From Podarcis liolepis (lineage: Eukaryota), in assembly GCA_965112155.1 (NCBI GenBank), contig OZ218102.1: a stretch of DNA of 64,000 nt. The stretch is one strand, 5' to 3'. The number at the start of each line of letters is the position of its first letter. Within the stretch, counting starts at the first letter, position 1. This document shows positions 25,249-62,232 of this stretch, one piece after another. Under the pieces are notes generated by a model, which saw only the letters and a list, made by a program, of their open reading frames with translations, ran no database searches and was not told the origin of the DNA. Position numbers and translations under genes: made by a program.

Positions 25249-25267
25249 ATGCCCGTCCGCAAGCAAG
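25249..25267 (+). CDS. DLG1: DLG1 beta first coding exon (MPVRKQ-D)
   Basis: gccATG Kozak context, 19 nt, AAG|GTGAGG donor. MPVRKQD is the SAP97 N-terminus. Confidence 0.95.
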
Positions 25268-25500
25268 GTGAGGCGCCGGAGGGGAGGCGGGCGGGAAAGT
25301 TTTCCTCGGCGGGGCAGCCGGGCGGAGGCGGGCGGGAGGGCGGCGGGCAGCCCCGGCCCTGGAGGAGGAGGAGGGGGGGGCCGGCGCCGCTCGGGAGCCT
25401 CTGAGCGCGTGCAGAGCGCGGGCGGCCGCCAGGGAGGAGGGCCGGGTGGCGGCGGCGGCGGCGGCGGAGCCCCCGTTCAGCGACGGTGTCCCTTTTGCAG

Positions 25501-25632
25501 ACACGCAGCGCGCCCTGCGCCTCCTGGAGGACTACCGCGCCAAGCTGAGCCGGGCGGACGAGAGGCAGCTGCGGAGCTCCGTCGAGAGAGTCATCGGCAT
25601 CTTCCAGAGCAGCCTCTTCCAGGCTCTGCTAG
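25501..25632 (+). CDS. DLG1: DLG1 L27 domain exon
   Basis: ttttgcAG acceptor; [44 protein letters not shown]; 132 nt; ends at a non-canonical AG|GCGAGT donor. Confidence 0.92.
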
Positions 25633-26094
25633 GCGAGTATCGGGGAGCTGGGGGGGGGGGAGGGAAGAGGGCGCCTGGAGCCGCGGGGACACACGGAAAC
25701 GGAATGGCCTTGGCTGCCCTCCTGCATTTGCAGCACATGCACTCAGTTTGGCAAGTTCCTGTGTCTAGACAAACTTGGCTACTCCTCCTCTGCTTGCCCC
25801 TGACTCGAGATCATTTATGAGCAAGTTTAAAAGGCACAGTTTCTGTATCTCCCGTTGGAAAAGTTTCACTACCATTTAGCCCACTCCTAATCCACAAAGG
25901 GCCTCTCCTCTTAATCCATGATTGCTAGGTTTACTCAAAGGTCTTTGAAGAAGTATCTTGTCAAAAAATTTTAAAAGTCAAAGTACACAAGGACAGTCAG
26001 ATCACCTCTGCCTGCCTCCCTGTTGATGCTCTTGGAGAGAGCAGAGTTTGTGAGACAGACTTTTTCCTTGCAGAAGCCTGTTGCTTCCGCTTCC

Positions 26095-27346: not shown

Positions 27347-27513
27347 ATATTCAAGAATTTTATGAAGTGACTTTACTTGACAATCCCAAAAGTGTTGATC
27401 GCTCAAAGCAGATTGAGTTTGTACAGCCTGTGAATACATGGGACTTCTCCAGCCTTCCAAGCACAACAGTGACTTCTGAAACACTGCCAAGCAGCCTTAG
27501 CCCAACCACAGAG
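27347..27513 (+). CDS. DLG1: DLG1 beta exon 3 (end of L27 + Ser/Thr linker)
   Basis: ctccAG acceptor, GAG|GTATGA donor, 167 nt. Encodes [56 protein letters not shown]. Missed by the ORF track. Confidence 0.96.
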
Positions 27514-32312: not shown

Positions 32313-32342
32313 ATGGACTGCCTTTGCATTGTAACCACCAAG
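32313..32342 (+). CDS. DLG1: DLG1 alpha-isoform first coding exon (MDCLCIVTTK, palmitoylated C3/C5)
   Basis: gcaATGG context, 30 nt, AAG|GTAAGA donor, phase 0 into the 43044 exon. Peptide identical to the alpha-SAP97/PSD-95 N-terminus. Confidence 0.95.
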
Positions 32343-36732: not shown

Positions 36733-39109
36733 CTGTTGGCTGCTTTGATTTCAATTAGAAAAGATGGCAAAACCATCTATGCATTGGTATTGTGCTGGTT
36801 TGGATGATTGTGAGCAAGTCCTTTGGACAAGCGGATGTTTGCAAGGCAGCCATTGACTTGCCTTGCTGAAGTGGGAGTCTTTGTCCATCGCATTGTTAGG
36901 CAAGACAACCTCTTAATGCGCCTCAAATGCATTCTCTGGGTGCGCCTGGCGGGGTGGGTCTTGAGGCATCATCCAAGAAAATGGGCTGAGAGCTTGTGAT
37001 TCCCCACCCCCAACACTGTATGGACCCAAGGACCACATCCTGCCCCTTTTATGCCGCTTGCCCAGGTTGGCTAAATCTTGGAGAGCCTGTCTGACTGTTA
37101 TGTTATTTTAGAAAGCAGGCCTTCGCAGAATAGGTATGGATGAACTCAAATGGAAACACACCAGGCATTTGAAAAAAAGATCTGCAGTGTTCCTATTCTG
37201 AGGGCAATTAGTCTAAATCATTTATTCTAAAACCACGTGGAATGAACCGCCTGCGATGTTTGTGAAAATGATACACACATTAGCTGCCAGTTGTTGTGTA
37301 CTGGATGTGGCCCTCCAGTCCATCACTTGGCTTCCAAGGTGTTCCTGAAGCTGAAGAGGTTCCCTGCCGGAGAGAGAAGGAATCCCACGCAGTTCAGGTG
37401 TGGTCCTTCTGCCCTCTCTGCTGTGTGTGAACCTGGCTAGGAGGGCTGGCTGAGCCCAAGTAAAATAGCTGGTCCCGGAATAAAACAGCCATGCTTGGAC
37501 CAAATAAGTTCTGCCAGTGCGCTCTGGGCTAAAAAAGCCCTCCTCCTCCTGGGGGAGGAGCGCAAAAGAACTAAACTAGCCCCTCAAAGCGGGCCCAAAC
37601 TATTCTGAGAAGTTAGCAGTGTAGTGGGATGGAACTTCCGCCTGTTTTTACCCTTTCCACGGCCACACTGTCCTTGGGAGGGTTGTGTCTGTTTTCTAGA
37701 CTTGGTGATCAGAGGGGGTACGGGGCACCACATTGCCTTGCCCTGGCTGCTTCCCTTTGTTTTTGTTCCAAAGCGGTGCAAGCGGGACCCTGCATCAAAA
37801 GTGCCATGTGCTGATAGATGGACCCCCCTTAGGCGGCAGCATAACGGTCAGATGAACGGTCAGCTCTGCCAGTTCCAGGTCTAAGTGCAAGAGCGTATTG
37901 TTTGAGGGGACAGATGAAACAATAAATCCTCTCTGTTGCAATTTCTTTAATGCAGCAGTGAATATTGCTATTGGATTGCCCTTTTGTTTCAAATCCTTAT
38001 CTAGTCTCAGCAATAAATGCTGCTGCCCCAAAGCCATTGTCCAGCCCTGCAAAACTGGCTGTAAGGCAGGATAGATTTAACAGTACCCTGCAGCGCTAAT
38101 AACTCTTATTGCAGTCTGTGGGTTGGAAATGAAGGCGCAGTGGTGAGAAGGGAAGCCCCTTTTATTCTGATGGGAATGTCTGGGTGATTCATGGCTGCCC
38201 ACACTGATTTCAGCTTTTCATTCCTGGTGCTGATTCACTGTGAAGCATTCCACGTATGCAGGCTGCAATAATTAACATTGTTCTTTGCTACCCACTAACA
38301 CTGCTGCCCCTCCGTTGCCCTGCCATTGCAATGAAACCTCTGCTGATACCCGATGTCTCCGTTCACCAATGGAAATGGGCTCCAAGAGAGACAGCTTCAG
38401 GATGCCCCATATATTGGTTGACTGTTCCAGGTGCCAGCCCTCCCTGCCTTCCAGGTAGACAGAAGTAACAGACAGGACCAGGAAATGTGCAGCGAGTGGC
38501 TGGATATTTTGAAGTTGGCTGCATTTACTTGGATTTCCAAGTTCCTGCTACAGTCTGAAGTGTGCTTGCTGGAGCCTCTCTCTCTCTCTCTGGCGTGTGC
38601 GTGTGTGTGCCCCCTGCCATGATGATGGGTCGGTTGCTGCAGCGTTTTGCCCCTCCCCCTCAGCATCTGGCATCAACGGAGCAGTGGCTGCAGTCAGATG
38701 AGCCGCTTTTATCCTTATGGAGGAGGTAGCGGAGCTTACTTTGCCTGCAGCAGGTGGAACTGCCTCGTCCCCTTCTCTCCCTCCCTCCCTGCTCCCCTCC
38801 CTGGAGATTTTTGGCCAAGAGGATTCCAAAAGGGAGCCCTTGCAGAGTTCTCTTCATGCTGGTGCCTTTTCTCTAGCTGAAGAGGGAGCCACCCTCTTGG
38901 AAAGGGACACATGGACCTCTTCGGCTCGACCCCGCAGGCGGTGGGGACTTCTGCCACGAGAAATAATTCCGTGCTGTTTTTCTGTCTCAGCTTTCTGTTG
39001 AGAGGATCATGGACTCACACGTCCAAGGCAGGCAGCAAGCCCTTCTTTCCCAAAGCATTCTTCTTGAATCTCGGTTGCTGAATGATGGAGGTGTCCTGGG
39101 TCTGAAAAG

Positions 39110-39211
39110 ATGTCTCCTAGCACAAAAAACGTGGATTGCTTTTCTCCCGTGCTGTGCCACTGCAAAGTAGCATGCAGCAACAACACTGTCTCTTTAATGT
39201 TTGGATGCAAG
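39110..39211 (+). CDS. DLG1: DLG1 alternative first exon, PSD-93-alpha-like (MSPSTKNVDCFSPVLCHCKVACSNNTVSLMFGCK)
   Basis: aagATG start, 102 nt, AAG|GTGGGT donor, phase 0. Aligns without gaps to the recalled DLG2 N-terminus MSPVVKDPDCFTPMICHCKVACTNNTLSLMFGCK. Confidence 0.85.
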
Positions 39212-42200
39212 GTGGGTCCGAACGGGGTTTCTGGCGAACCTCTGGCACATCTAAATAAATTAGCAGCATCTCCTTGTTAATGGGATCTGTAGCAATAGAA
39301 TTATGCCATGGGATGGGATTAAGTCATATGCTTTTGGTGACGTGCTGGGGGCAGGCAGGCAGGCAGTGGCGATCTCTGCTCGGTCGGTGTGCCTTGTGGA
39401 AGAGGGATATTGCACACGCACCCTCTGCAGGAGAACAATTAAAAGGCAGAGTAGAAAAACCTCCGGGGAAGGCTGAAGCACTGCCCTGGCAAAGCACGGC
39501 ATGTTTTTGTAGTTACCGCTTTTACTTTGCAATATTCATACCCTGTTCTTTTCTTTATGGGGCTCCTGGGGTGGCTTACAGTAATAAAAAGGTATCTACA
39601 GCAGGAAGTAGCTATTCTGTGGCTATCAAGGGTTCTGTCTGTCGGAATGGAAGCCTCCTGAGGTCCCTGGGGGAACACCTGAGGGCTTTGGGGGCTGTGA
39701 TGGGGCAATGAAGGGGGCTTAGTGACCTTTAATGCAAAGCATCCATTTGGATTGACTTGATGGCTTTTCTTTCTTCCCTCCTTTTTAAAAAAGTGAAATG
39801 CATGTTATTATCCAGTATTTGGGGGTTTCCTCATAAGTATGTGGGTTGAGATACCCCAGGCTGCGATTGGTTTCCAGATACTTGAGAGAGAGAGCAGCTG
39901 AAGCATGCCTTTTGCCTCTGAGAGGATCTTCAGGCAAGTTCAGTTGACCCAGCCAGGGTTCTTGAGGACTGACTTGCAGCTGAAATGTTGCAGGGAAAGT
40001 GCAATGATTGGAGGACAGCTTTGGGGTTGGCACTGGGAGGGAAATGGGGGAGAGGGTTGCAGGAAGGCAATAAAGAGTTTTCAGTGACGGCAGCTGCCTC
40101 ACAGCTGCCCCTCTTGGGGAATGGCAAAAATGTTCAGCTCCATTCTTTTTTAAAAATCTTCCTGTGGGGTGCATGTTTCATGTGAAATCTCAGCAGTTTG
40201 TATATTAGCACTTCCAACTTCCAGTGTGGCCTGCAAGTACCCAGGGCTAGCCGGACCCTTTGATTTAGTGGCTGAATAGCCAGTCCCTTCACAGAGAGGT
40301 GTGTCTGGCACCTGTGTTGTGTAGCTTTTGTTATATGCTGAAGAGGCACATCTTTGCCCTGGCTTTTGACGCCTGAGACATATTTGGACCCACCCTATGT
40401 TTTTGACCATGATTTGTTGTAACAGATTTTAATGTTGTGTTTTAAAATAGTTGTAACCTGCCCTGAGACCTTGTGGAAATTCTGGATGGCAGCTAAGACT
40501 TTCCCTACCACTCAGGCTGTGTTTTGCATGCTGGTTGTGAGCAGAGGAGGTTTAATATGCCAGGAGAAAACTTGCCCTGGAGAGGTTATAGATGCTGCCT
40601 GCAACTTCAGATTCGTGTTTCCTTCTCTTCCCCACCAGTGACGGAACAATAACTTTTGGGGGGGGGCACAAGTTGAGGTTTCATGATGTTTCCCCTTCCT
40701 CAGCATTGGCCTGGGGTGAGGTGCAGCGCATCTCCACATTCCATTGTGGTTTCCACAAGGCTGCCAAGGTTTGTCTCTGCATATGCTCCCAAGCACTCTG
40801 TGTGCGGGTATCTTTTTCCAAAGTACCATTTTAAACTTATTGGTTCCAGAGGCTGGTGAAGCCTGGGGAGTCCCAGTGGTGCTTGCAGGTATGTTTGTAG
40901 GTCCCCTCCCCAAGTTGTTTATTGCTGTTACTCCTGAAGCATATCCAGTCCATGGGAAATGATTAAAATGCTCTGTTAATGGTGCTAACTGTGGTGGTTG
41001 AAGGACCAGGCAAGCCAGATCCAAAATGGAGAAGCTTACTTAGAAGTGCTTATTTCTGGTATGCTTTTTGCACAAGCGGGCTAAGAAATAACATGCCCAG
41101 GACATGTGAGCAGTATTCTAGCCTGACCTGCACCAACGCCAGCCCAACTTCAGTGTTACTCACATTTGCAGTATCCTCTGTCTTGGCAGAAAGGAAGAAC
41201 CATATCTTTGGCTTCTGTTACTGGTCTAATGAAACAGTGACCAACACATGGCTCCTAGCTCCAGCTGCTGTTTCCTGAGTGCCAATGGTTGTGCGCCTTT
41301 TACAGTTCTTGTGCAGAACTTCAGATATTTATTCCACCAAGGAGGAGAAAGGTCTCTTTCTCTTCTTCCTCTTCCTCTTGGTTGTCTTCTTTAAATAATC
41401 CCTTGGCTCCATGGACTGATTCTTCCCTGTGACAGCTGATTTCCTCCTCCTGGCCATCTTTTGTTCGCAGAATGATTCAGACTGCTGGGCAGAAGAGGCG
41501 GGAGGGCTGCAAGCTGCCATTTGCCCACTGCACTGAAACGGGTGGGTGAATGCTGGAGTTGGCAGCACTCTGTCTGCAGAGGGAGAACTGGGAGCCGCAG
41601 GGCAGAGAGCGCACTTGAATTCCCAGCGCCTGGCTCTGAACAAAAGGCAGAGTGTGGCCTTTTGTTTGAGTGCTCAGGCAGTCTCCAAGCTGAAACGCAC
41701 AGTAGGGATAAGCTGTGAAGTTTTTCTACACCCAAGCAGTATATAATTTTGAATGAAATTTTATGAAATAAATAAATATCCACTGGCACCCCATTCAGCC
41801 AGTGCCCCCCTGGGTAAGGTGGGATGGGTTGGCCTCTCAACACACACGCAAGCACCCCGCCCCTCCTCAACGATTCGATGGAAAGCCCGGGCCTGCTGGC
41901 TATGCCTAGATGGCCTTGGCGACTGGTCCACCGGGATGCCTTTCCCCAGCATCATTTGGTGCACCAGCCGCGGTCCCTTTGGTTCCAGGATGGCCTCGTG
42001 CCAGGTGTCCCCACGTGAGTCACATCCTGACTCACTTTCCTCGGTGCTTGTGCTGGGTCAAGCAGGGCATCCAGGCTGTTGACCAGGGGCTTGTGGTCAT
42101 GAGCCTGTTGGCTTGGCTCTTCCAGGGGACTCTCTTGGCTCCTGGCTCATTTCTGGGCACAGTTCTAAATGGTGGCTTTAGAAATGGTGGCAGGTGGGTT

Positions 42201-42682
42201 GTCAAAGGCCTTCCTCTTGGCCTGTGAACCTGCCCAGCGTCTTCAGGGACCTTCGCTTGTGGGTGGGCTTTCTCTGGAGAAAACGTCTTCCTTTGTCTCT
42301 CCCCTCTCCCCACCCCACCCTGGCAGGGGAGTTCTCCTGCCATCTTGTTCACTAGCCTGTGGGCACGAGGTAAAATCTGTGTTTCTCTTGGCTTTTGGTT
42401 GTTAATGTGCTAATGGTTTGTTTTTGTCCAAGCTCTTTAGTTTAGGTTATAGAACTGGTTTTCTAATGGCTAAAATGTTTAATGGTGGCTTTTGGTGTCT
42501 TCCAGGATTTCTTTTTTATTTTGCTATTATTTTTTTGTTTTTTATTTTGCTTGAATGTATACTTTTTATTTGGCTTTATTCATTGATGCTTTATTCTGGA
42601 TTGTTTTATTTGATGTTTTAATGTAGGTTGTAAGCCACTTGGAGATTTCTTTCTTAAAAGCATAAAGTAGCATAGAAATGAA

Positions 42683-42684
<2 letters not shown>

Positions 42685-42733
<49 letters not shown>
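42685..42733 (+). repeat. (TAA)~16 microsatellite at the tail of a degenerate L2 3' end
   Basis: Perfect TAA array preceded by 'gttgtaagccacttggag...aagtagcatagaaat'. Confidence 0.9.
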
Positions 42734-43043
42734 TTATGGCATTTTCTGGGATGAGTATGTGTGTCATTTTGACTTAAGGTGTCTGCAGAAAGATGGAATT
42801 TAAATGTCATCAATAAGTAAAAGTGGGTGGTTCTGCATGGGGGGGTGGAGTCTGGCAGGGACTGCACAAGCAGAGGGGGGCAACCTTGATGTGCAACTTG
42901 GGCAGCCTGTGCTGGGATCGTTGCAGAGAAGGCAGAGCTCTCTTGTTGCCGCCTTCTTCCCCTCTTAAGTTGGGGAAGCAAGTTGTGTTGTTGAGGTTTG
43001 CCTTGTAAAACTGGTCTCCTTTTGAACCTTTTTCCTCCCCCAG

Positions 43044-43214
43044 AAATACCGTTCTCACGATGACGATGACACGCCTTCGCCAGAGCACGGCTCCCCCCGG
43101 GAAACTCCCAGTGAGGCAGCAGCTCCAGAGCTTGTGCAGGTTTCCGAGAAGAGCCTCTCTCAAGTTGAGAGCGTCCATGGATTTGTGTCCCACTCTCACA
43201 TTTCGCCAGTCAAG
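43044..43214 (+). CDS. DLG1: DLG1 common N-terminal exon (MAGUK_N_PEST region)
   Basis: ccccAG acceptor, AAG|GTAGGA donor, 171 nt. Encodes [57 protein letters not shown]. Confidence 0.95.
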
Positions 43215-44439
43215 GTAGGAGGCGTGCACATGTTTCAGAGCCTCTTTGGGTATGATGGGTCAGGTGTCCGGTGAAAAGCTGCATGCCTTCTTCCTGCTGT
43301 AAAGATTTCATGTTCATTCCAAGTCCTACCCTTATGTCTTTCTAATTGGTGGGTTCTCATCATAACATGAAGTTCTGACGTGTTATTCATTCATTTCCTA
43401 CTGCATCTCTGAAGCAAGGTAACCGGTTCTTCCTGTTTGAGGAATCTAAGGTTTCACTCTCTCACAAATCATTCTTTTGATGGCTGTGTAGGATTTTGTC
43501 TGCAAATTCTTAGTCTATTTCTAGGTTATGGCATGAAAACCCGAGTATTCCTCTGTTGTGAGATTTTTTTATTCAGTTGAGTTTAGGGTTGAGAGCAGGG
43601 TTTCCCAACAATGTCCAAAATTAGCCAGGTGTCAGGGGCATTTTATAATTGGCTATCAGCTACTTACGAGTAAGTGAAGATGCCTGGGTACCAGGATGGT
43701 GCCTGACACTTCCACTATCTGGAGGTGCATGCCTGGGGATCAGTGGATCTGGACTGTTTTCACATACTAATACCCCATCCTGTAGAAATCCAGTTGTTAT
43801 CTTTTATCTGCACAATCAGAATGAAAGCAAAATGCTTTTTCTGTGCAGCCTGAGCAGGAACAGTGAATGGCTTACATTTTGCCTTCACTTATCCCACCCC
43901 ACAGTTTCTCTGATAATAATAATATGTGACCTTAAAAGAGGGGTGCTCAGAACAACACACACAGGAACTGGACTGCTGGCAAATTTTGAGCCTGCATGAC
44001 CTGGCACTGACCTTTTGTATCATGGTGGCAGCAGTGGGAGTGGCGTGGGTTTCTGAGATTCAGGAGTTCCCTGCTCAGCACAAGGTTGCCTTGGGTGGCG
44101 AGTTCTGGGCAGTGGGTTCAAGAGGGCTGTGGAGAAGCTGCCAGTGGGGCTGGAGGACAGCTGTGAGAAGGGCGGGACCCTGAAGCAGTTCTTTCAGTAC
44201 CAGGGAGCAGCAGCTGGTGGGCTGTTTTTGAAAAGCGGAATGGCTCGTGGGCTGGGATGGAAGGACCGTGATGAACCAGACAAGAAGAGTCCTTGTTTAA
44301 ACAACAGAGAGGTGGCTGGTGGCTGGTGTAAAAGCAGTTCAGGAGAGGGGAGGCTGCCATGGGAGGTTGTGGTGCAGCTGGCACAGTCCAGATGGTGTGC
44401 TGGGAGGCTGGGCATGAGCTCCTCAGGCCATCCTCCCCC

Positions 44440-52448: not shown

Positions 52449-52691
52449 ATGAATTACATTTTTGGAAACAACACTCTGCTCTACTCGCGCACCAGTCGGG
52501 GCGGCAACACTGGATCCGGCCATAGCTCGGGAGGGCCCAAGCAGAAGCTGTGGGCAAAGAAGGGCTCTGGGGATGCCCTGCCTTCCGAGGAGGCCGAGAC
52601 TTCGCGCTGGCAGCAGATTGCTGCCTTCTTCACTCGCAGGCATCGCTTCTTCTTCTTTGACTGCATCTCTGTGGCTGCCAGCTCCAGCCAG
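52449..52691 (+). CDS. DLG1: DLG1 alternative first exon (MNYIFGNNTLLYSR...CISVAASSSQ)
   Basis: gagATG start, 243 nt, CAG|GTAAAG donor, phase 0. Matches the recalled human DLG1 isoform start MNYIFGNNTLLYSRGSRGGNT...RWQQIVAFFTRRH. Confidence 0.92.
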
Positions 52692-53374
52692 GTAAAGCGT
52701 CACTTGTTGAAATCGGGGGGGGGGGGGGAGGGAGGGAGGGCAGCCATTGATAGAAGGGCTGGATCTGGCAATGGGCTCTCCTTCCACAGCTGCCAGGATT
52801 AGGGCAGGGTTAGAAGAGGAAGGAATATTGCAGTCAGCCTCATAGGTTCCTGGGTTTGGCTTTGAGCATATTAAAAACTTGCATGAACACCAGCTTGGTG
52901 GCTTAACATTTCTTCTGACCTGCCACATAAATAGGGATTTTGGCACAAATGCCTGACACGATTGGGGCTGCAAAATTAGACTTAGTCAAACAGCTGGATT
53001 CCAGGGAGAGGCTAGGAGGGCAACCTGGGCCACAAGTAGCAGGCTGCATGGCTTTGTTTGGGTGGGTGGGCAAGCGTTGTCCTGGAGTGAAGAGTCCTGA
53101 CTCTGTTCCGAGGGCTCTGGGTCGCCATGGCTGAGATGTCTGACCCCAACGGGGTCTTGGTAGGCCTGGTGAGATAAAGGAAGAGAACAGAGTTGGAAGT
53201 GCCTCTTGACAGGAGCTGGCAGCCACGACCGGGAGGCTTGTCTCTGCAGAGCCCCAGGAAACGACCAGGCCGGGGGGGGGGGCAGTGAGTTCAGTTTCCC
53301 ACCCTGAGGGCAGGAAAGGAGAGCACTCTTCTTCCCAGAGCATCCCTGGGATTGTAACTTGCCCAACTTTCAGT

Positions 53375-61917: not shown

Positions 61918-62232
61918 ATGGCCGCCTGCTCCCCCCCACGCAAGTGCTGCTGTGGGGCTCCTGACGGCTGTGCAGTGGGGCCTCTGAGGCAAGCTGGCTC
62001 TGCCACCAAGGCCTGGGCAGACGCGGCACCTCCTCCGGGGCTCCAGCCCCAGGATGCAGCCGGGCAGCCGCCTTGTGTTTCAGCCACGCTGCCTGTGGCA
62101 CCCAAACACAGGGGCAGGTTCACCAACCTGCGCGACAGTGTGAAGAAGAGCCCCACCAAGAGCCCCGCCAAGGTGAGGGCTGCCAGCGGGTGGGGCTCCG
62201 ACAGCTCCTGGTCCCATTGCTCCTCGGAGAAG
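61918..62232 (+). CDS. DLG1: DLG1 alternative first exon, PSD-93-delta/SAP102-like; two in-frame donors (62172, 62232)
   Basis: MAACSPPRKCCCGAPDG...SATLP...LRDSVKKSPTKSPAK|VRAASGWGSDSSWSHCSSEK|. AAG|GTGAGG and AAG|GTAAGC are both phase 0. Motifs match the recalled DLG2 SQTMP and LWDSVRKSPHKTSTK. Confidence 0.72.

What the first reader, a model, noticed from the sequence alone, without database searches (positions are those of the whole stretch)
39110..39211. DLG1 carries a PSD-93-alpha-type Cys-rich first exon
Seen: an ATG-initiated 34-codon exon, MSPSTKNVDCFSPVLCHCKVACSNNTVSLMFGCK, with a phase-0 donor upstream of the KYR.. common exon. It is too short for the ORF track. Known (recalled): this N-terminus, CHCKVAC.NNT.SLMFGCK, is the palmitoylated alpha start of the paralog DLG2/PSD-93, while SAP97 is normally described with only the alpha (MDCLC) and beta (L27) starts. 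Inference: the exon predates the DLG1/DLG2 duplication and gives a second lipid-anchored SAP97 isoform with five Cys. The internal Met of MICHC is Val here, so only the long form can be made.
Basis: partly seen in the sequence, partly recalled or inferred. Interest (0 to 1): 0.85.

Follow-up and report, generated by a model that had tools for sequence, protein, structure and literature searches.

The report
Known Cys-rich alternative DLG1 first exon
The 34-codon cysteine-rich exon is real and belongs to DLG1/SAP97, but genome annotations from fish to mammals already list it, so it is an ordinary conserved alternative first exon; the only local oddity is that this lineage has lost the 30-codon leader found in other land vertebrates.

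Summary
Window 39110-39211 (+) is an ATG-initiated 34-codon frame, MSPSTKNVDCFSPVLCHCKVACSNNTVSLMFGCK, with five Cys and a phase-0 AAG|GTGGGT donor. It lies between the MDCLCIVTTK exon (32313) and the common KYR exon (43044) of a gene that is DLG1/SAP97 (its L27 exon matches the SAP97 L27 structure).

The homology claim holds. The same exon type heads DLG2/PSD-93 and DLG4 models, so it predates the paralog split.

The novelty claim fails. 325 full-length proteins carry this exon. The 120 listed are all DLG1 or dlg1-like models, from primates, monotremes, birds, a crocodilian, turtles, gar and teleosts. They include the cDNA-based Swiss-Prot entry for zebrafish Dlg1l (Q5PYH5), which starts at the same MSPS Met.

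Other tetrapod models start 30 codons further upstream in the same exon. Here that leader is a wreck: ATG became ACG, there is a frameshift, and there are two in-frame TGAs. Two strong-context upstream AUGs remain.

RNA-like contigs of two related species cover the exon up to the donor. No 39211->43044 junction was seen. In one raw RNA-seq run all 14 reads entering 43044 came from the L27 exon.

Palmitoylation is inferred from PSD-93, not shown. The scan holds no earlier finding on this exon.

The parts
39110..39211 (+). Coding part of the alpha2-type alternative first exon of DLG1: 34 codons, five Cys (C-x5-C-x-C-x3-C-x10-C)
   Evidence: sequence and translation. (64 phmmer hits, best E 9e-13). 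(listed DLG1/dlg1l models carry MSPSIKNLDCFSPMLCHCKVACTN[SN]TISLMFGCK joined to KYR...). (up to 30/34 identical to DLG1 versions, at most 26 to DLG2 and 25 to DLG4).
39212..39217 (+). Splice donor GTGGGT, phase 0
   Evidence: The contig of run X1 stops matching exactly at 39211 and the contig of X3 ends at 39215, consistent with an exon end. The junction itself was not seen.
38858..39109 (+). 5' untranslated part of the exon, as far as contigs of related species cover it. It carries upstream AUGs at 38911 (56 codons, ends 39081) and 39009 (53 codons, out of frame, overlaps the main ATG, ends 39170), both with A at -3 and G at +4.
   Evidence: X4 contigs 38858-39009 and 38980-39181; X1 38922-39211; X3 38952-39215. 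(ATG list).
39019..39109 (+). Relic of the 30-codon leader that begins the exon in other tetrapods. The initiator is ACG (39019-39021). SKAGSK lies in another frame (39022-39039), so there is a frameshift before 39053. In-frame TGAs lie at 39065-39067 and 39083-39085. The last residues, CPGSEK, are still in frame.
   Evidence: tblastn of the first 64 residues of the Gavialis, Dermochelys, bird, echidna and lemur DLG1 models against the window. (leader sequences). (species B contigs differ from the window only at 39047, 39102 and 39148, so they share the lesions).
43044..43214 (+). Common exon 2, KYRSHDDDD...[13 protein letters not shown], the expected splice target
   Evidence: 14 raw RNA reads of X21 enter at this acceptor from the L27 exon, and two alternative continuations leave at 43214.
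32313..32342 (+). Classical alpha first exon MDCLCIVTTK with donor GTAAGA
25249..25631 (+). Beta start: MPVRKQ exon (donor G|GTGAGG) and the first L27 exon (about 25500-25632)
   Evidence: (PDB 1rso, SAP97 L27, E 5.2e-16).
27347..27513 (+). Second L27 exon (DIQEFYEV...SLSPTTE), spliced to 43044 in RNA reads. The start coordinate is approximate.
   Evidence: The loose-end consensus at 43042 matches 27482-27513 with one mismatch.

Best explanation
This is the local ortholog of a conserved, already annotated alternative first exon of DLG1/SAP97, called 'alpha2-type' after PSD-93alpha2. The 5' end of the gene holds an array of alternative starts: the L27/beta exons, the MDCLC alpha exon, then this exon. 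Each has a phase-0 donor that fits the common KYR exon at 43044. Transcription from a promoter just upstream of about 38860 would give an mRNA whose protein begins with MSPSTKNVDCFSPVLCHCKVACSNNTVSLMFGCK in place of the L27 domain. By homology with PSD-93alpha2, the Cys cluster is probably S-palmitoylated and would tether this SAP97 variant to membranes. That step is inferred, not shown. In this lineage the ancestral 30-codon leader upstream of the MSPS Met has decayed, so translation can only start at 39110, as it does in zebrafish Dlg1l and cyprinid dlg1 models. The isoform is minor. Two strong upstream AUGs probably lower its translation further.
For: The sequence and donor are as described. 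The host gene is DLG1. The exon gives 64 phmmer hits, best E 9e-13. 325 full-length proteins carry it. The 120 listed are DLG1/dlg1l models of primates, a shrew, monotremes, birds, gharial, turtles, gar and teleosts, and almost all show it joined to KYR.... Accessions include XP_019359076.1, XP_043348462.1, XP_038605417.1 and XP_015216223.1. Zebrafish NP_001012388.1 = Q5PYH5 = cDNA record AAV68500.1 starts directly at MSPS. The paralogous exon occurs in DLG2 and DLG4. The mouse Dlg2 gene has the same layout, with alpha1 and alpha2 exons both spliced onto the common exon (PMC6389146). PSD-93 has two palmitoylated N-terminal variants (PMC6365469). The core is 85% identical to the sauropsid DLG1 consensus (29/34, all changes conservative), against about 68% for constitutive exon 2. 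The one coding difference seen in contigs of the related species (39148 C>A) is synonymous. RNA-like contigs of two related species from three studies cover about 38858-39211 and stop at the donor. X1 and X4 show no other unique intron coverage.
Against: No read or contig joins 39211 to 43044. In raw RNA-seq run X21 (about 12% of it read) the exon has zero depth, and all 14 reads entering 43044 come from the L27 exon. The runs that hold the exon are only guessed to be RNA. X3 also covers introns at a similar depth, and one of its contigs runs 4 nt into the intron. Upstream AUGs at 38911 and 39009 in strong context would hinder initiation at 39110. Leader loss could be the first step of decay. 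Palmitoylation of this peptide has never been tested here or, as far as the held papers show, for any DLG1 version.
Confidence: 0.8

Rival explanations
1. The exon is a decaying relic in this lineage. It may still be transcribed at a low level but is no longer translated into a functional SAP97 N-terminus. The intact 34-codon frame would then be residual.
For: The ancestral start codon is ACG and the leader carries a frameshift and two TGAs. Two strong-context upstream AUGs exist, one of which overlaps the main ATG. Birds, the crocodilian and turtles show no replacement in the 34 codons, while this lineage shows five. There are no exon reads in the raw RNA-seq run.
Against: The 34 codons and the GT donor are intact. 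All five changes are conservative and none falls on the five Cys, the Pro, the Lys after the C-x-C motif or the FGC motif. The core is better conserved than constitutive exon 2 in this same fast-evolving lineage. Zebrafish Dlg1l and cyprinid dlg1 models also start at the MSPS Met without a leader. Three related species share the frame, with only one synonymous difference.
Confidence: 0.15
2. One reading: a DLG1 N-terminus that has not been recognised before, a hidden second lipid-anchored SAP97 isoform.
For: A review states that SAP97 has only alpha and beta N-terminal variants (PMC6365469). The peptide string occurs in none of the held papers.
Against: The exon heads hundreds of RefSeq, Ensembl and UniProt DLG1/dlg1l entries across vertebrates, and a cDNA-based Swiss-Prot entry.
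Confidence: 0.03
3. The peptide is a chance open frame, or the locus is DLG2 rather than DLG1.
For: None beyond the short length of the exon.
Against: E-values down to 9e-13 against 1.84 billion proteins. The window holds the SAP97 L27 exons, the MDCLCIVTTK exon and a DLG1-like exon 2. The peptide is nearer to DLG1 versions (up to 30/34) than to DLG2 (at most 26/34).
Confidence: 0.01

Closest known systems
Predicted DLG1 isoforms of tetrapods and gar in RefSeq/Ensembl (e.g. XP_019359076.1 Gavialis X14, XP_043348462.1 Dermochelys X26, XP_038605417.1 Tachyglossus X9, XP_015216223.1 Lepisosteus X10)
   Same: The same exon at the same place in the same gene: MSPSIKNLDCFSPMLCHCKVACTN[SN]TISLMFGCK joined to the KYR exon. 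29-30 of 34 residues are identical and all five Cys are kept.
   Different: Those models start 30 codons upstream in the same exon (MSKTGSKQRLQRHFSGISVTDRLKCTGSEK or MFKTVSKQH...). Here that leader is destroyed. Position 14 is Met there and Val here.
Zebrafish Dlg1l / SAP97B (Swiss-Prot Q5PYH5, NP_001012388.1, cDNA record AAV68500.1) and cyprinid dlg1 models
   Same: The protein begins directly at the MSPS Met with the 34-residue Cys-rich exon, followed by KYR....
   Different: This is the teleost-specific dlg1 duplicate. Other teleost dlg1l models carry a long Gly/Ser/Arg-rich extension (MVRAGSSS...) upstream.
PSD-93alpha2 (DLG2) N-terminus, MICHCKVACTNNTLSLMFGCK
   Same: Paralogous exon with the same Cys pattern and the same splice onto the common KYR exon. 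It is reported to be palmitoylated (PMC6365469).
   Different: A different gene. The rodent protein is described from the internal Met (20 residues before KYRYQDED), whereas turtle and carnivore models include the full 34 residues. Function was tested only for PSD-93.
SAP97alpha / PSD-95alpha first exon, MDCLCIVTTK
   Same: An alternative first exon of the same gene (window 32313), with a phase-0 donor onto the same KYR exon. It is Cys-containing and palmitoylated at Cys3/Cys5.
   Different: It has 10 residues and two Cys and is not similar in sequence. It is a separate exon 6.8 kb upstream.

Membership tests
Alpha2-type Cys-rich alternative first exon of DLG-MAGUK genes (DLG1/DLG2/DLG4) | Sequence similarity over the whole 34 residues | tested here: met
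   64 hits, best E 9e-13, most aligned over 1-34; up to 30/34 identical to DLG1 versions.
Alpha2-type Cys-rich alternative first exon of DLG-MAGUK genes (DLG1/DLG2/DLG4) | Cys pattern C-x5-C-x-C-x3-C-x10-C plus FGCK at the exon end | tested here: met
   All five Cys are present here and in the listed DLG1, DLG2 and DLG4 versions. The rare exceptions are P0045, P0053 and P0063.
Alpha2-type Cys-rich alternative first exon of DLG-MAGUK genes (DLG1/DLG2/DLG4) | Position between the L27/alpha exons and the common KYR exon, on the same strand, with a phase-0 donor | tested here: met
   L27 exons at 25.2-27.5 kb, MDCLC at 32313, this exon at 39110, KYR at 43044. The mouse Dlg2 layout is the same.
Alpha2-type Cys-rich alternative first exon of DLG-MAGUK genes (DLG1/DLG2/DLG4) | Spliced onto the KYR exon in mRNA | tested here: inconclusive
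   contigs of related species end at the donor, but no junction was seen, and 14/14 raw reads into 43044 come from the L27 exon. Orthologous database models and the zebrafish cDNA do show the join.
Alpha2-type Cys-rich alternative first exon of DLG-MAGUK genes (DLG1/DLG2/DLG4) | S-palmitoylation of the Cys cluster | not testable with these tools
   Reported for PSD-93 variants only (PMC6365469).
DLG1/SAP97 gene (as opposed to DLG2, DLG3 or DLG4) | SAP97-type L27 domain, MDCLCIVTTK exon and DLG1-type exon 2 | tested here: met
   (1rso SAP97 L27, E 5.2e-16). (exon 2 scores 175-191 against DLG1 and 143-151 against DLG2)..
Tetrapod form of the exon with the 30-codon leader | An open frame from an ATG 30 codons upstream of the MSPS Met | tested here: not met
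   ACG in place of ATG, a frameshift, and TGAs at 39065 and 39083.

The most novel reading that the evidence does not exclude
A third, Cys-rich 'SAP97alpha2' N-terminal isoform is conserved across bony vertebrates, and its exon type is shared with DLG2 and DLG4 and so is older than their split. It would be functional and palmitoylated, yet it is absent from the SAP97 literature, which counts only alpha and beta. The loss of the leader in this lineage, with the 34-residue core kept, would point to that core as the functional unit.
Probability: 0.5. Interest if true: 0.4.

Novelty: already known. Interest (0 to 1): 0.2.

Why it matters
Work on SAP97 in synaptic AMPA/NMDA receptor trafficking contrasts a palmitoylated alpha form with an L27 beta form. 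A second Cys-rich start would be a further way to target the protein to membranes. The exon itself is no discovery, because annotation pipelines and one cDNA-based reference protein already contain it. The useful points are smaller. The reviews lag behind the databases. DLG1, DLG2 and DLG4 all keep both an MDCLC/MFFACYC-type and this alpha2-type exon. This lineage is a natural case in which the leader is gone and the core remains.

Tried and rejected
1. Direct junction evidence. The single read-laying run (three contig runs and one raw RNA-seq run of related species) showed no 39211->43044 joint. The raw run had no reads on the exon.

2. The 30 letters that an X4 contig joins to 38980 were searched in the window with up to 3 mismatches and gave 0 matches. 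A possible upstream non-coding exon could therefore not be placed.

3. Literature. The string CHCKVAC occurs in no held paper. Searches on Dlg1 alternative first exons, SAP97alpha and PSD-93alpha2 and on SAP97B/dlg1l found nothing on this N-terminus in DLG1.

4. Earlier scan notes held nothing on this exon.

5. The spliced exon 1 + exon 2 protein was never joined or searched; each exon was searched by reference. Two hits named Homo sapiens DLG1 (P0115, P0138) and the unnamed Logan cluster of P0001 (mammal-type leader, one member on 310 contigs, possibly human or another primate) were not looked up further, and no contig of theirs was fetched.

6. Rejected readings: chance ORF, and a DLG2 locus.

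7. The identity of the species was not pursued. By its rate of divergence it looks like a fast-evolving sauropsid, but that was not tested.

Full report
**The observation**

Window 39110-39211 on the + strand reads ATG...AAG and translates to MSPSTKNVDCFSPVLCHCKVACSNNTVSLMFGCK: 34 codons with five Cys. It is followed by gtgggt, a phase-0 AAG|GT donor. In the same frame a TGA lies at 39083-39085, so 39110 is the first usable ATG. The proposed target exon, KYRSHDDDD...[13 protein letters not shown], is at 43044-43214. It is in phase 0 at both ends and sits behind a strong polypyrimidine-CAG acceptor.

**The gene**

The + strand of the window carries the 5' part of DLG1/SAP97:
- MPVRKQ at 25249, with a G|GTGAGG donor.
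- An L27 exon at about 25500-25632, whose translation matches the solved SAP97 L27 domain (1rso, E 5.2e-16; 3lra, DLG1).
- A second L27 exon ending at 27513.
- The classical alpha exon MDCLCIVTTK at 32313.
- The exon in question at 39110.
- The KYR exon at 43044.
- An MNYIFGNNTLLYS... first exon at 52449.

Exon 2 aligns better to DLG1 of gharial, turtle, bird and echidna (scores 175-191) than to DLG2 (143-151). The locus is therefore DLG1, not DLG2.

**Not a chance frame**

phmmer with the 34 residues against 1.84 billion representative proteins returned 64 hits at E<=1e-3 and 12 at E<=1e-10, the best at 9.2e-13. Most were aligned over residues 1-34. Many hits are genomic open frames that run through the donor into VG..., which shows the same exon-intron boundary in other genomes. 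Others are spliced models that continue with KYR....

**Already annotated**

A word-indexed search was run with the exon region of a salmonid dlg1l isoform. It allows full-length candidates and found 325 proteins. The 120 listed are all DLG1 or dlg1-like models. Nearly all show MSPSIKNLDCFSPMLCHCKVACTN[SN]TISLMFGCK followed by the KYR exon.

They come from primates (including two entries that their source names Homo sapiens DLG1, which I did not pursue), a shrew, a donkey, platypus and echidna, many birds, gharial, sea turtles and a tortoise, gar, paddlefish and many teleosts.

Accessions obtained include XP_019359076.1, XP_043348462.1, XP_038605417.1 and XP_015216223.1. Zebrafish NP_001012388.1 = Swiss-Prot Q5PYH5 (DLG1L_DANRE) = AAV68500.1 is a cDNA-derived record whose protein begins exactly at this MSPS Met.

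The exon is therefore known to the sequence databases as a DLG1 start. The review literature has not caught up. PMC6365469 states that PSD-95 and SAP97 exist in two N-terminal variants, alpha and beta, and that PSD-93 has six, two of them palmitoylated. A 2020 preprint likewise treats SAP97alpha exon 1 as residues 1-10 and PSD-93alpha2 exon 1 as the 20 residues before KYRYQDED. The peptide string is in none of the held papers, and two further searches found nothing on it.

**Paralogs**

The same exon type heads DLG2. P0210 (Caniformia) and P0020 (Caretta) read M[SC]P.VK.PDCFTPMICHCKVACTNNTLSLMFGCK followed by KYRYQDEDA.HDH.LPRLTHEVRGPELVHV...HGYVLQSHISPLK. That exon-2 sequence is the one found in a macaque brain cDNA which its source calls similar to DLG2/chapsyn-110 and which starts MFFACYCALRTNVK.

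It also heads DLG4:
- P0051 reads MSPPVRNLKCPSPVMCQCKVICSNRTLSLMFGCK + KYRYQDEETPPLEHSPAHL. Its best match among solved structures is DLG4/PSD-95 (2xkx, E 1e-227).
- In Caretta one DLG4 fragment starts with this exon type (P0225) and another with MDCLCIVTTK (P0291).
- Skate models carry the DLG4-type version as well (P0217, P0034).

So DLG1, DLG2 and DLG4 each keep an MDCLC/MFFACYC-type exon and an alpha2-type exon. Both splice onto the common KYR exon, as described for mouse Dlg2 (PMC6389146). The window's peptide is nearest to the DLG1 versions (up to 30/34), then DLG2 (at most 26) and DLG4 (at most 25). In that script the Cys positions were required by the search pattern, so their invariance there is by construction. 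The unforced lists show them kept, with three exceptions.

**What is particular here**

In mammals, birds, gharial and turtles the models start 30 codons upstream of the MSPS Met, with MSKTGSKQRLQRHFSGISVTDRLKCTGSEK or MFKTVSKQH... Genomic open frames such as P0001 and P0002 show that this leader lies in the same exon.

tblastn of the first 64 residues of five such models against the window shows the leader as a relic:
- SKAGSK is recognisable at 39022-39039, but in another frame and preceded by ACG (39019-39021) where the Met should be.
- The rest aligns in the coding frame as KHSS*ISVAE*WRCPGSEK, with TGAs at 39065-39067 and 39083-39085.

Contigs of a related species differ from the window between 38952 and 39215 only at 39047, 39102 and 39148, so they share these lesions. 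The reason is broader than Val14, however: an ancestral 64-residue form has been lost.

The core has five replacements against the sauropsid consensus (I5T, L8V, M14V, T23S, I26V). All are conservative. None falls on the five Cys, the Pro, the Lys after the C-x-C motif or the FGC motif. The core is 85% identical to that consensus, against about 68% for constitutive exon 2 in this lineage. This suggests the core is still under constraint.

Two points weigh against efficient translation. The upstream AUGs at 38911 and 39009 both have A at -3 and G at +4. The second opens a 53-codon frame that overlaps the main ATG.

**Expression**

No listed holder of the exon is on record as RNA. The eleven small holder runs (X1-X11, of three related organisms) are only guessed to be RNA. 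I laid three of them and one raw RNA-seq run on 37600-43400.
- **X1:** a 295-nt contig matches 38922-39211 and stops matching exactly at the donor, with 5 letters unplaced. A mismatch close to the contig end could also cause that clipping.
- **X4:** contigs cover 38858-39009 and 38980-39181 and no other unique part of the intron.
- **X3:** one contig covers 38952-39215, that is 4 nt into the intron. X3 also has low intronic coverage elsewhere, so its signal could be pre-mRNA.
- **X21 (raw, stranded, about 12% read):** depth is zero on the exon. All 14 reads that enter the 43044 acceptor carry the end of the L27 exon (...CCAACCACAG/AG|AAATAC).

The only coding difference seen in these species, 39148 C>A, is synonymous.

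In sum, transcription of the exon in close relatives is likely, the junction is unproven, and the isoform is minor next to beta. I did not build or search a joined exon 1 + exon 2 protein; each exon was searched by reference.

**Mechanism and verdict**

The best reading (about 0.8) is an orthologous alpha2-type alternative first exon. It replaces the L27 domain by a Cys-rich peptide that is probably palmitoylated, by analogy with PSD-93alpha2. Palmitoylation is inferred, not shown.

A lineage-specific relic that is no longer translated is the main rival (about 0.15).

Novelty: already known. Interest is low. The modest value lies in the gap between reviews and databases, the retention of both alpha-type exons in three paralogs, and the loss of the leader in this lineage.

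Noticed in passing
window 25620-25645: The first L27 exon ends CTGCTAG|GCGAGT. The reading frame (Q A L L, then G+AT = D of DIQEFYEV) requires the intron to start with GC, which looks like a GC-AG intron.
   Followed up: no
window 38965-38985: An X4 contig joins 113 letters that are not in the laid stretch to position 38980, right after an acceptor-like ttttctgtctcag. The 30 letters shown do not occur in the window with up to 3 mismatches. This could be an upstream non-coding exon outside the window or a chimeric contig.
   Followed up: partly
window 43214/43215: Raw RNA reads of X21 leave the KYR exon with two different continuations (4 reads each): one starts ATACCAGAAGCTGTTCC..., the other CAAATCCTCCTCCAGTGGTGGTGAAC (ANPPPVVVN). 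From my own knowledge, not a tool result, this matches the known alternative I1 insertion of SAP97.
   Followed up: no
window 52449-52700: A further alternative first exon, MNYIFGNNTLLYSRTSRGGNTGSGHSSGGPKQKLWAKKGS..., lies downstream of the KYR exon and so must splice onto a later exon. Another first-reader note (s1-847972) flags one more candidate first exon at 61918-62232.
   Followed up: no
window 42590-42633 and about 42690-42760: A short dispersed repeat is covered at very high depth in all four runs, with unrelated flanks. Next to it is a long tri-nucleotide run that translates as poly-Ile.
   Followed up: no
proteins P0225 and P0291 (Caretta), P0217 and P0034 (skates), P0051 (Salvelinus): DLG4/PSD-95 of turtle, skates and teleosts also has an alpha2-type Cys-rich first exon (..CFSPV.CQCKV.C.N.TLSLMFGCK) beside MDCLCIVTTK. 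Several of these models are named 'disks large homolog 1-like' by their source, although P0051 matches PSD-95 best.
   Followed up: partly
proteins P0044, P0045, P0031, P0074: In some teleost models the Cys-rich exon is followed by an extra exon, NRPPAVQG..PH..QPP.CM.P..MN.PW, before the ..YQ(E/D)(E/D)D exon. P0074 places it behind an L27 region in what looks like a read-through gene model.
   Followed up: no
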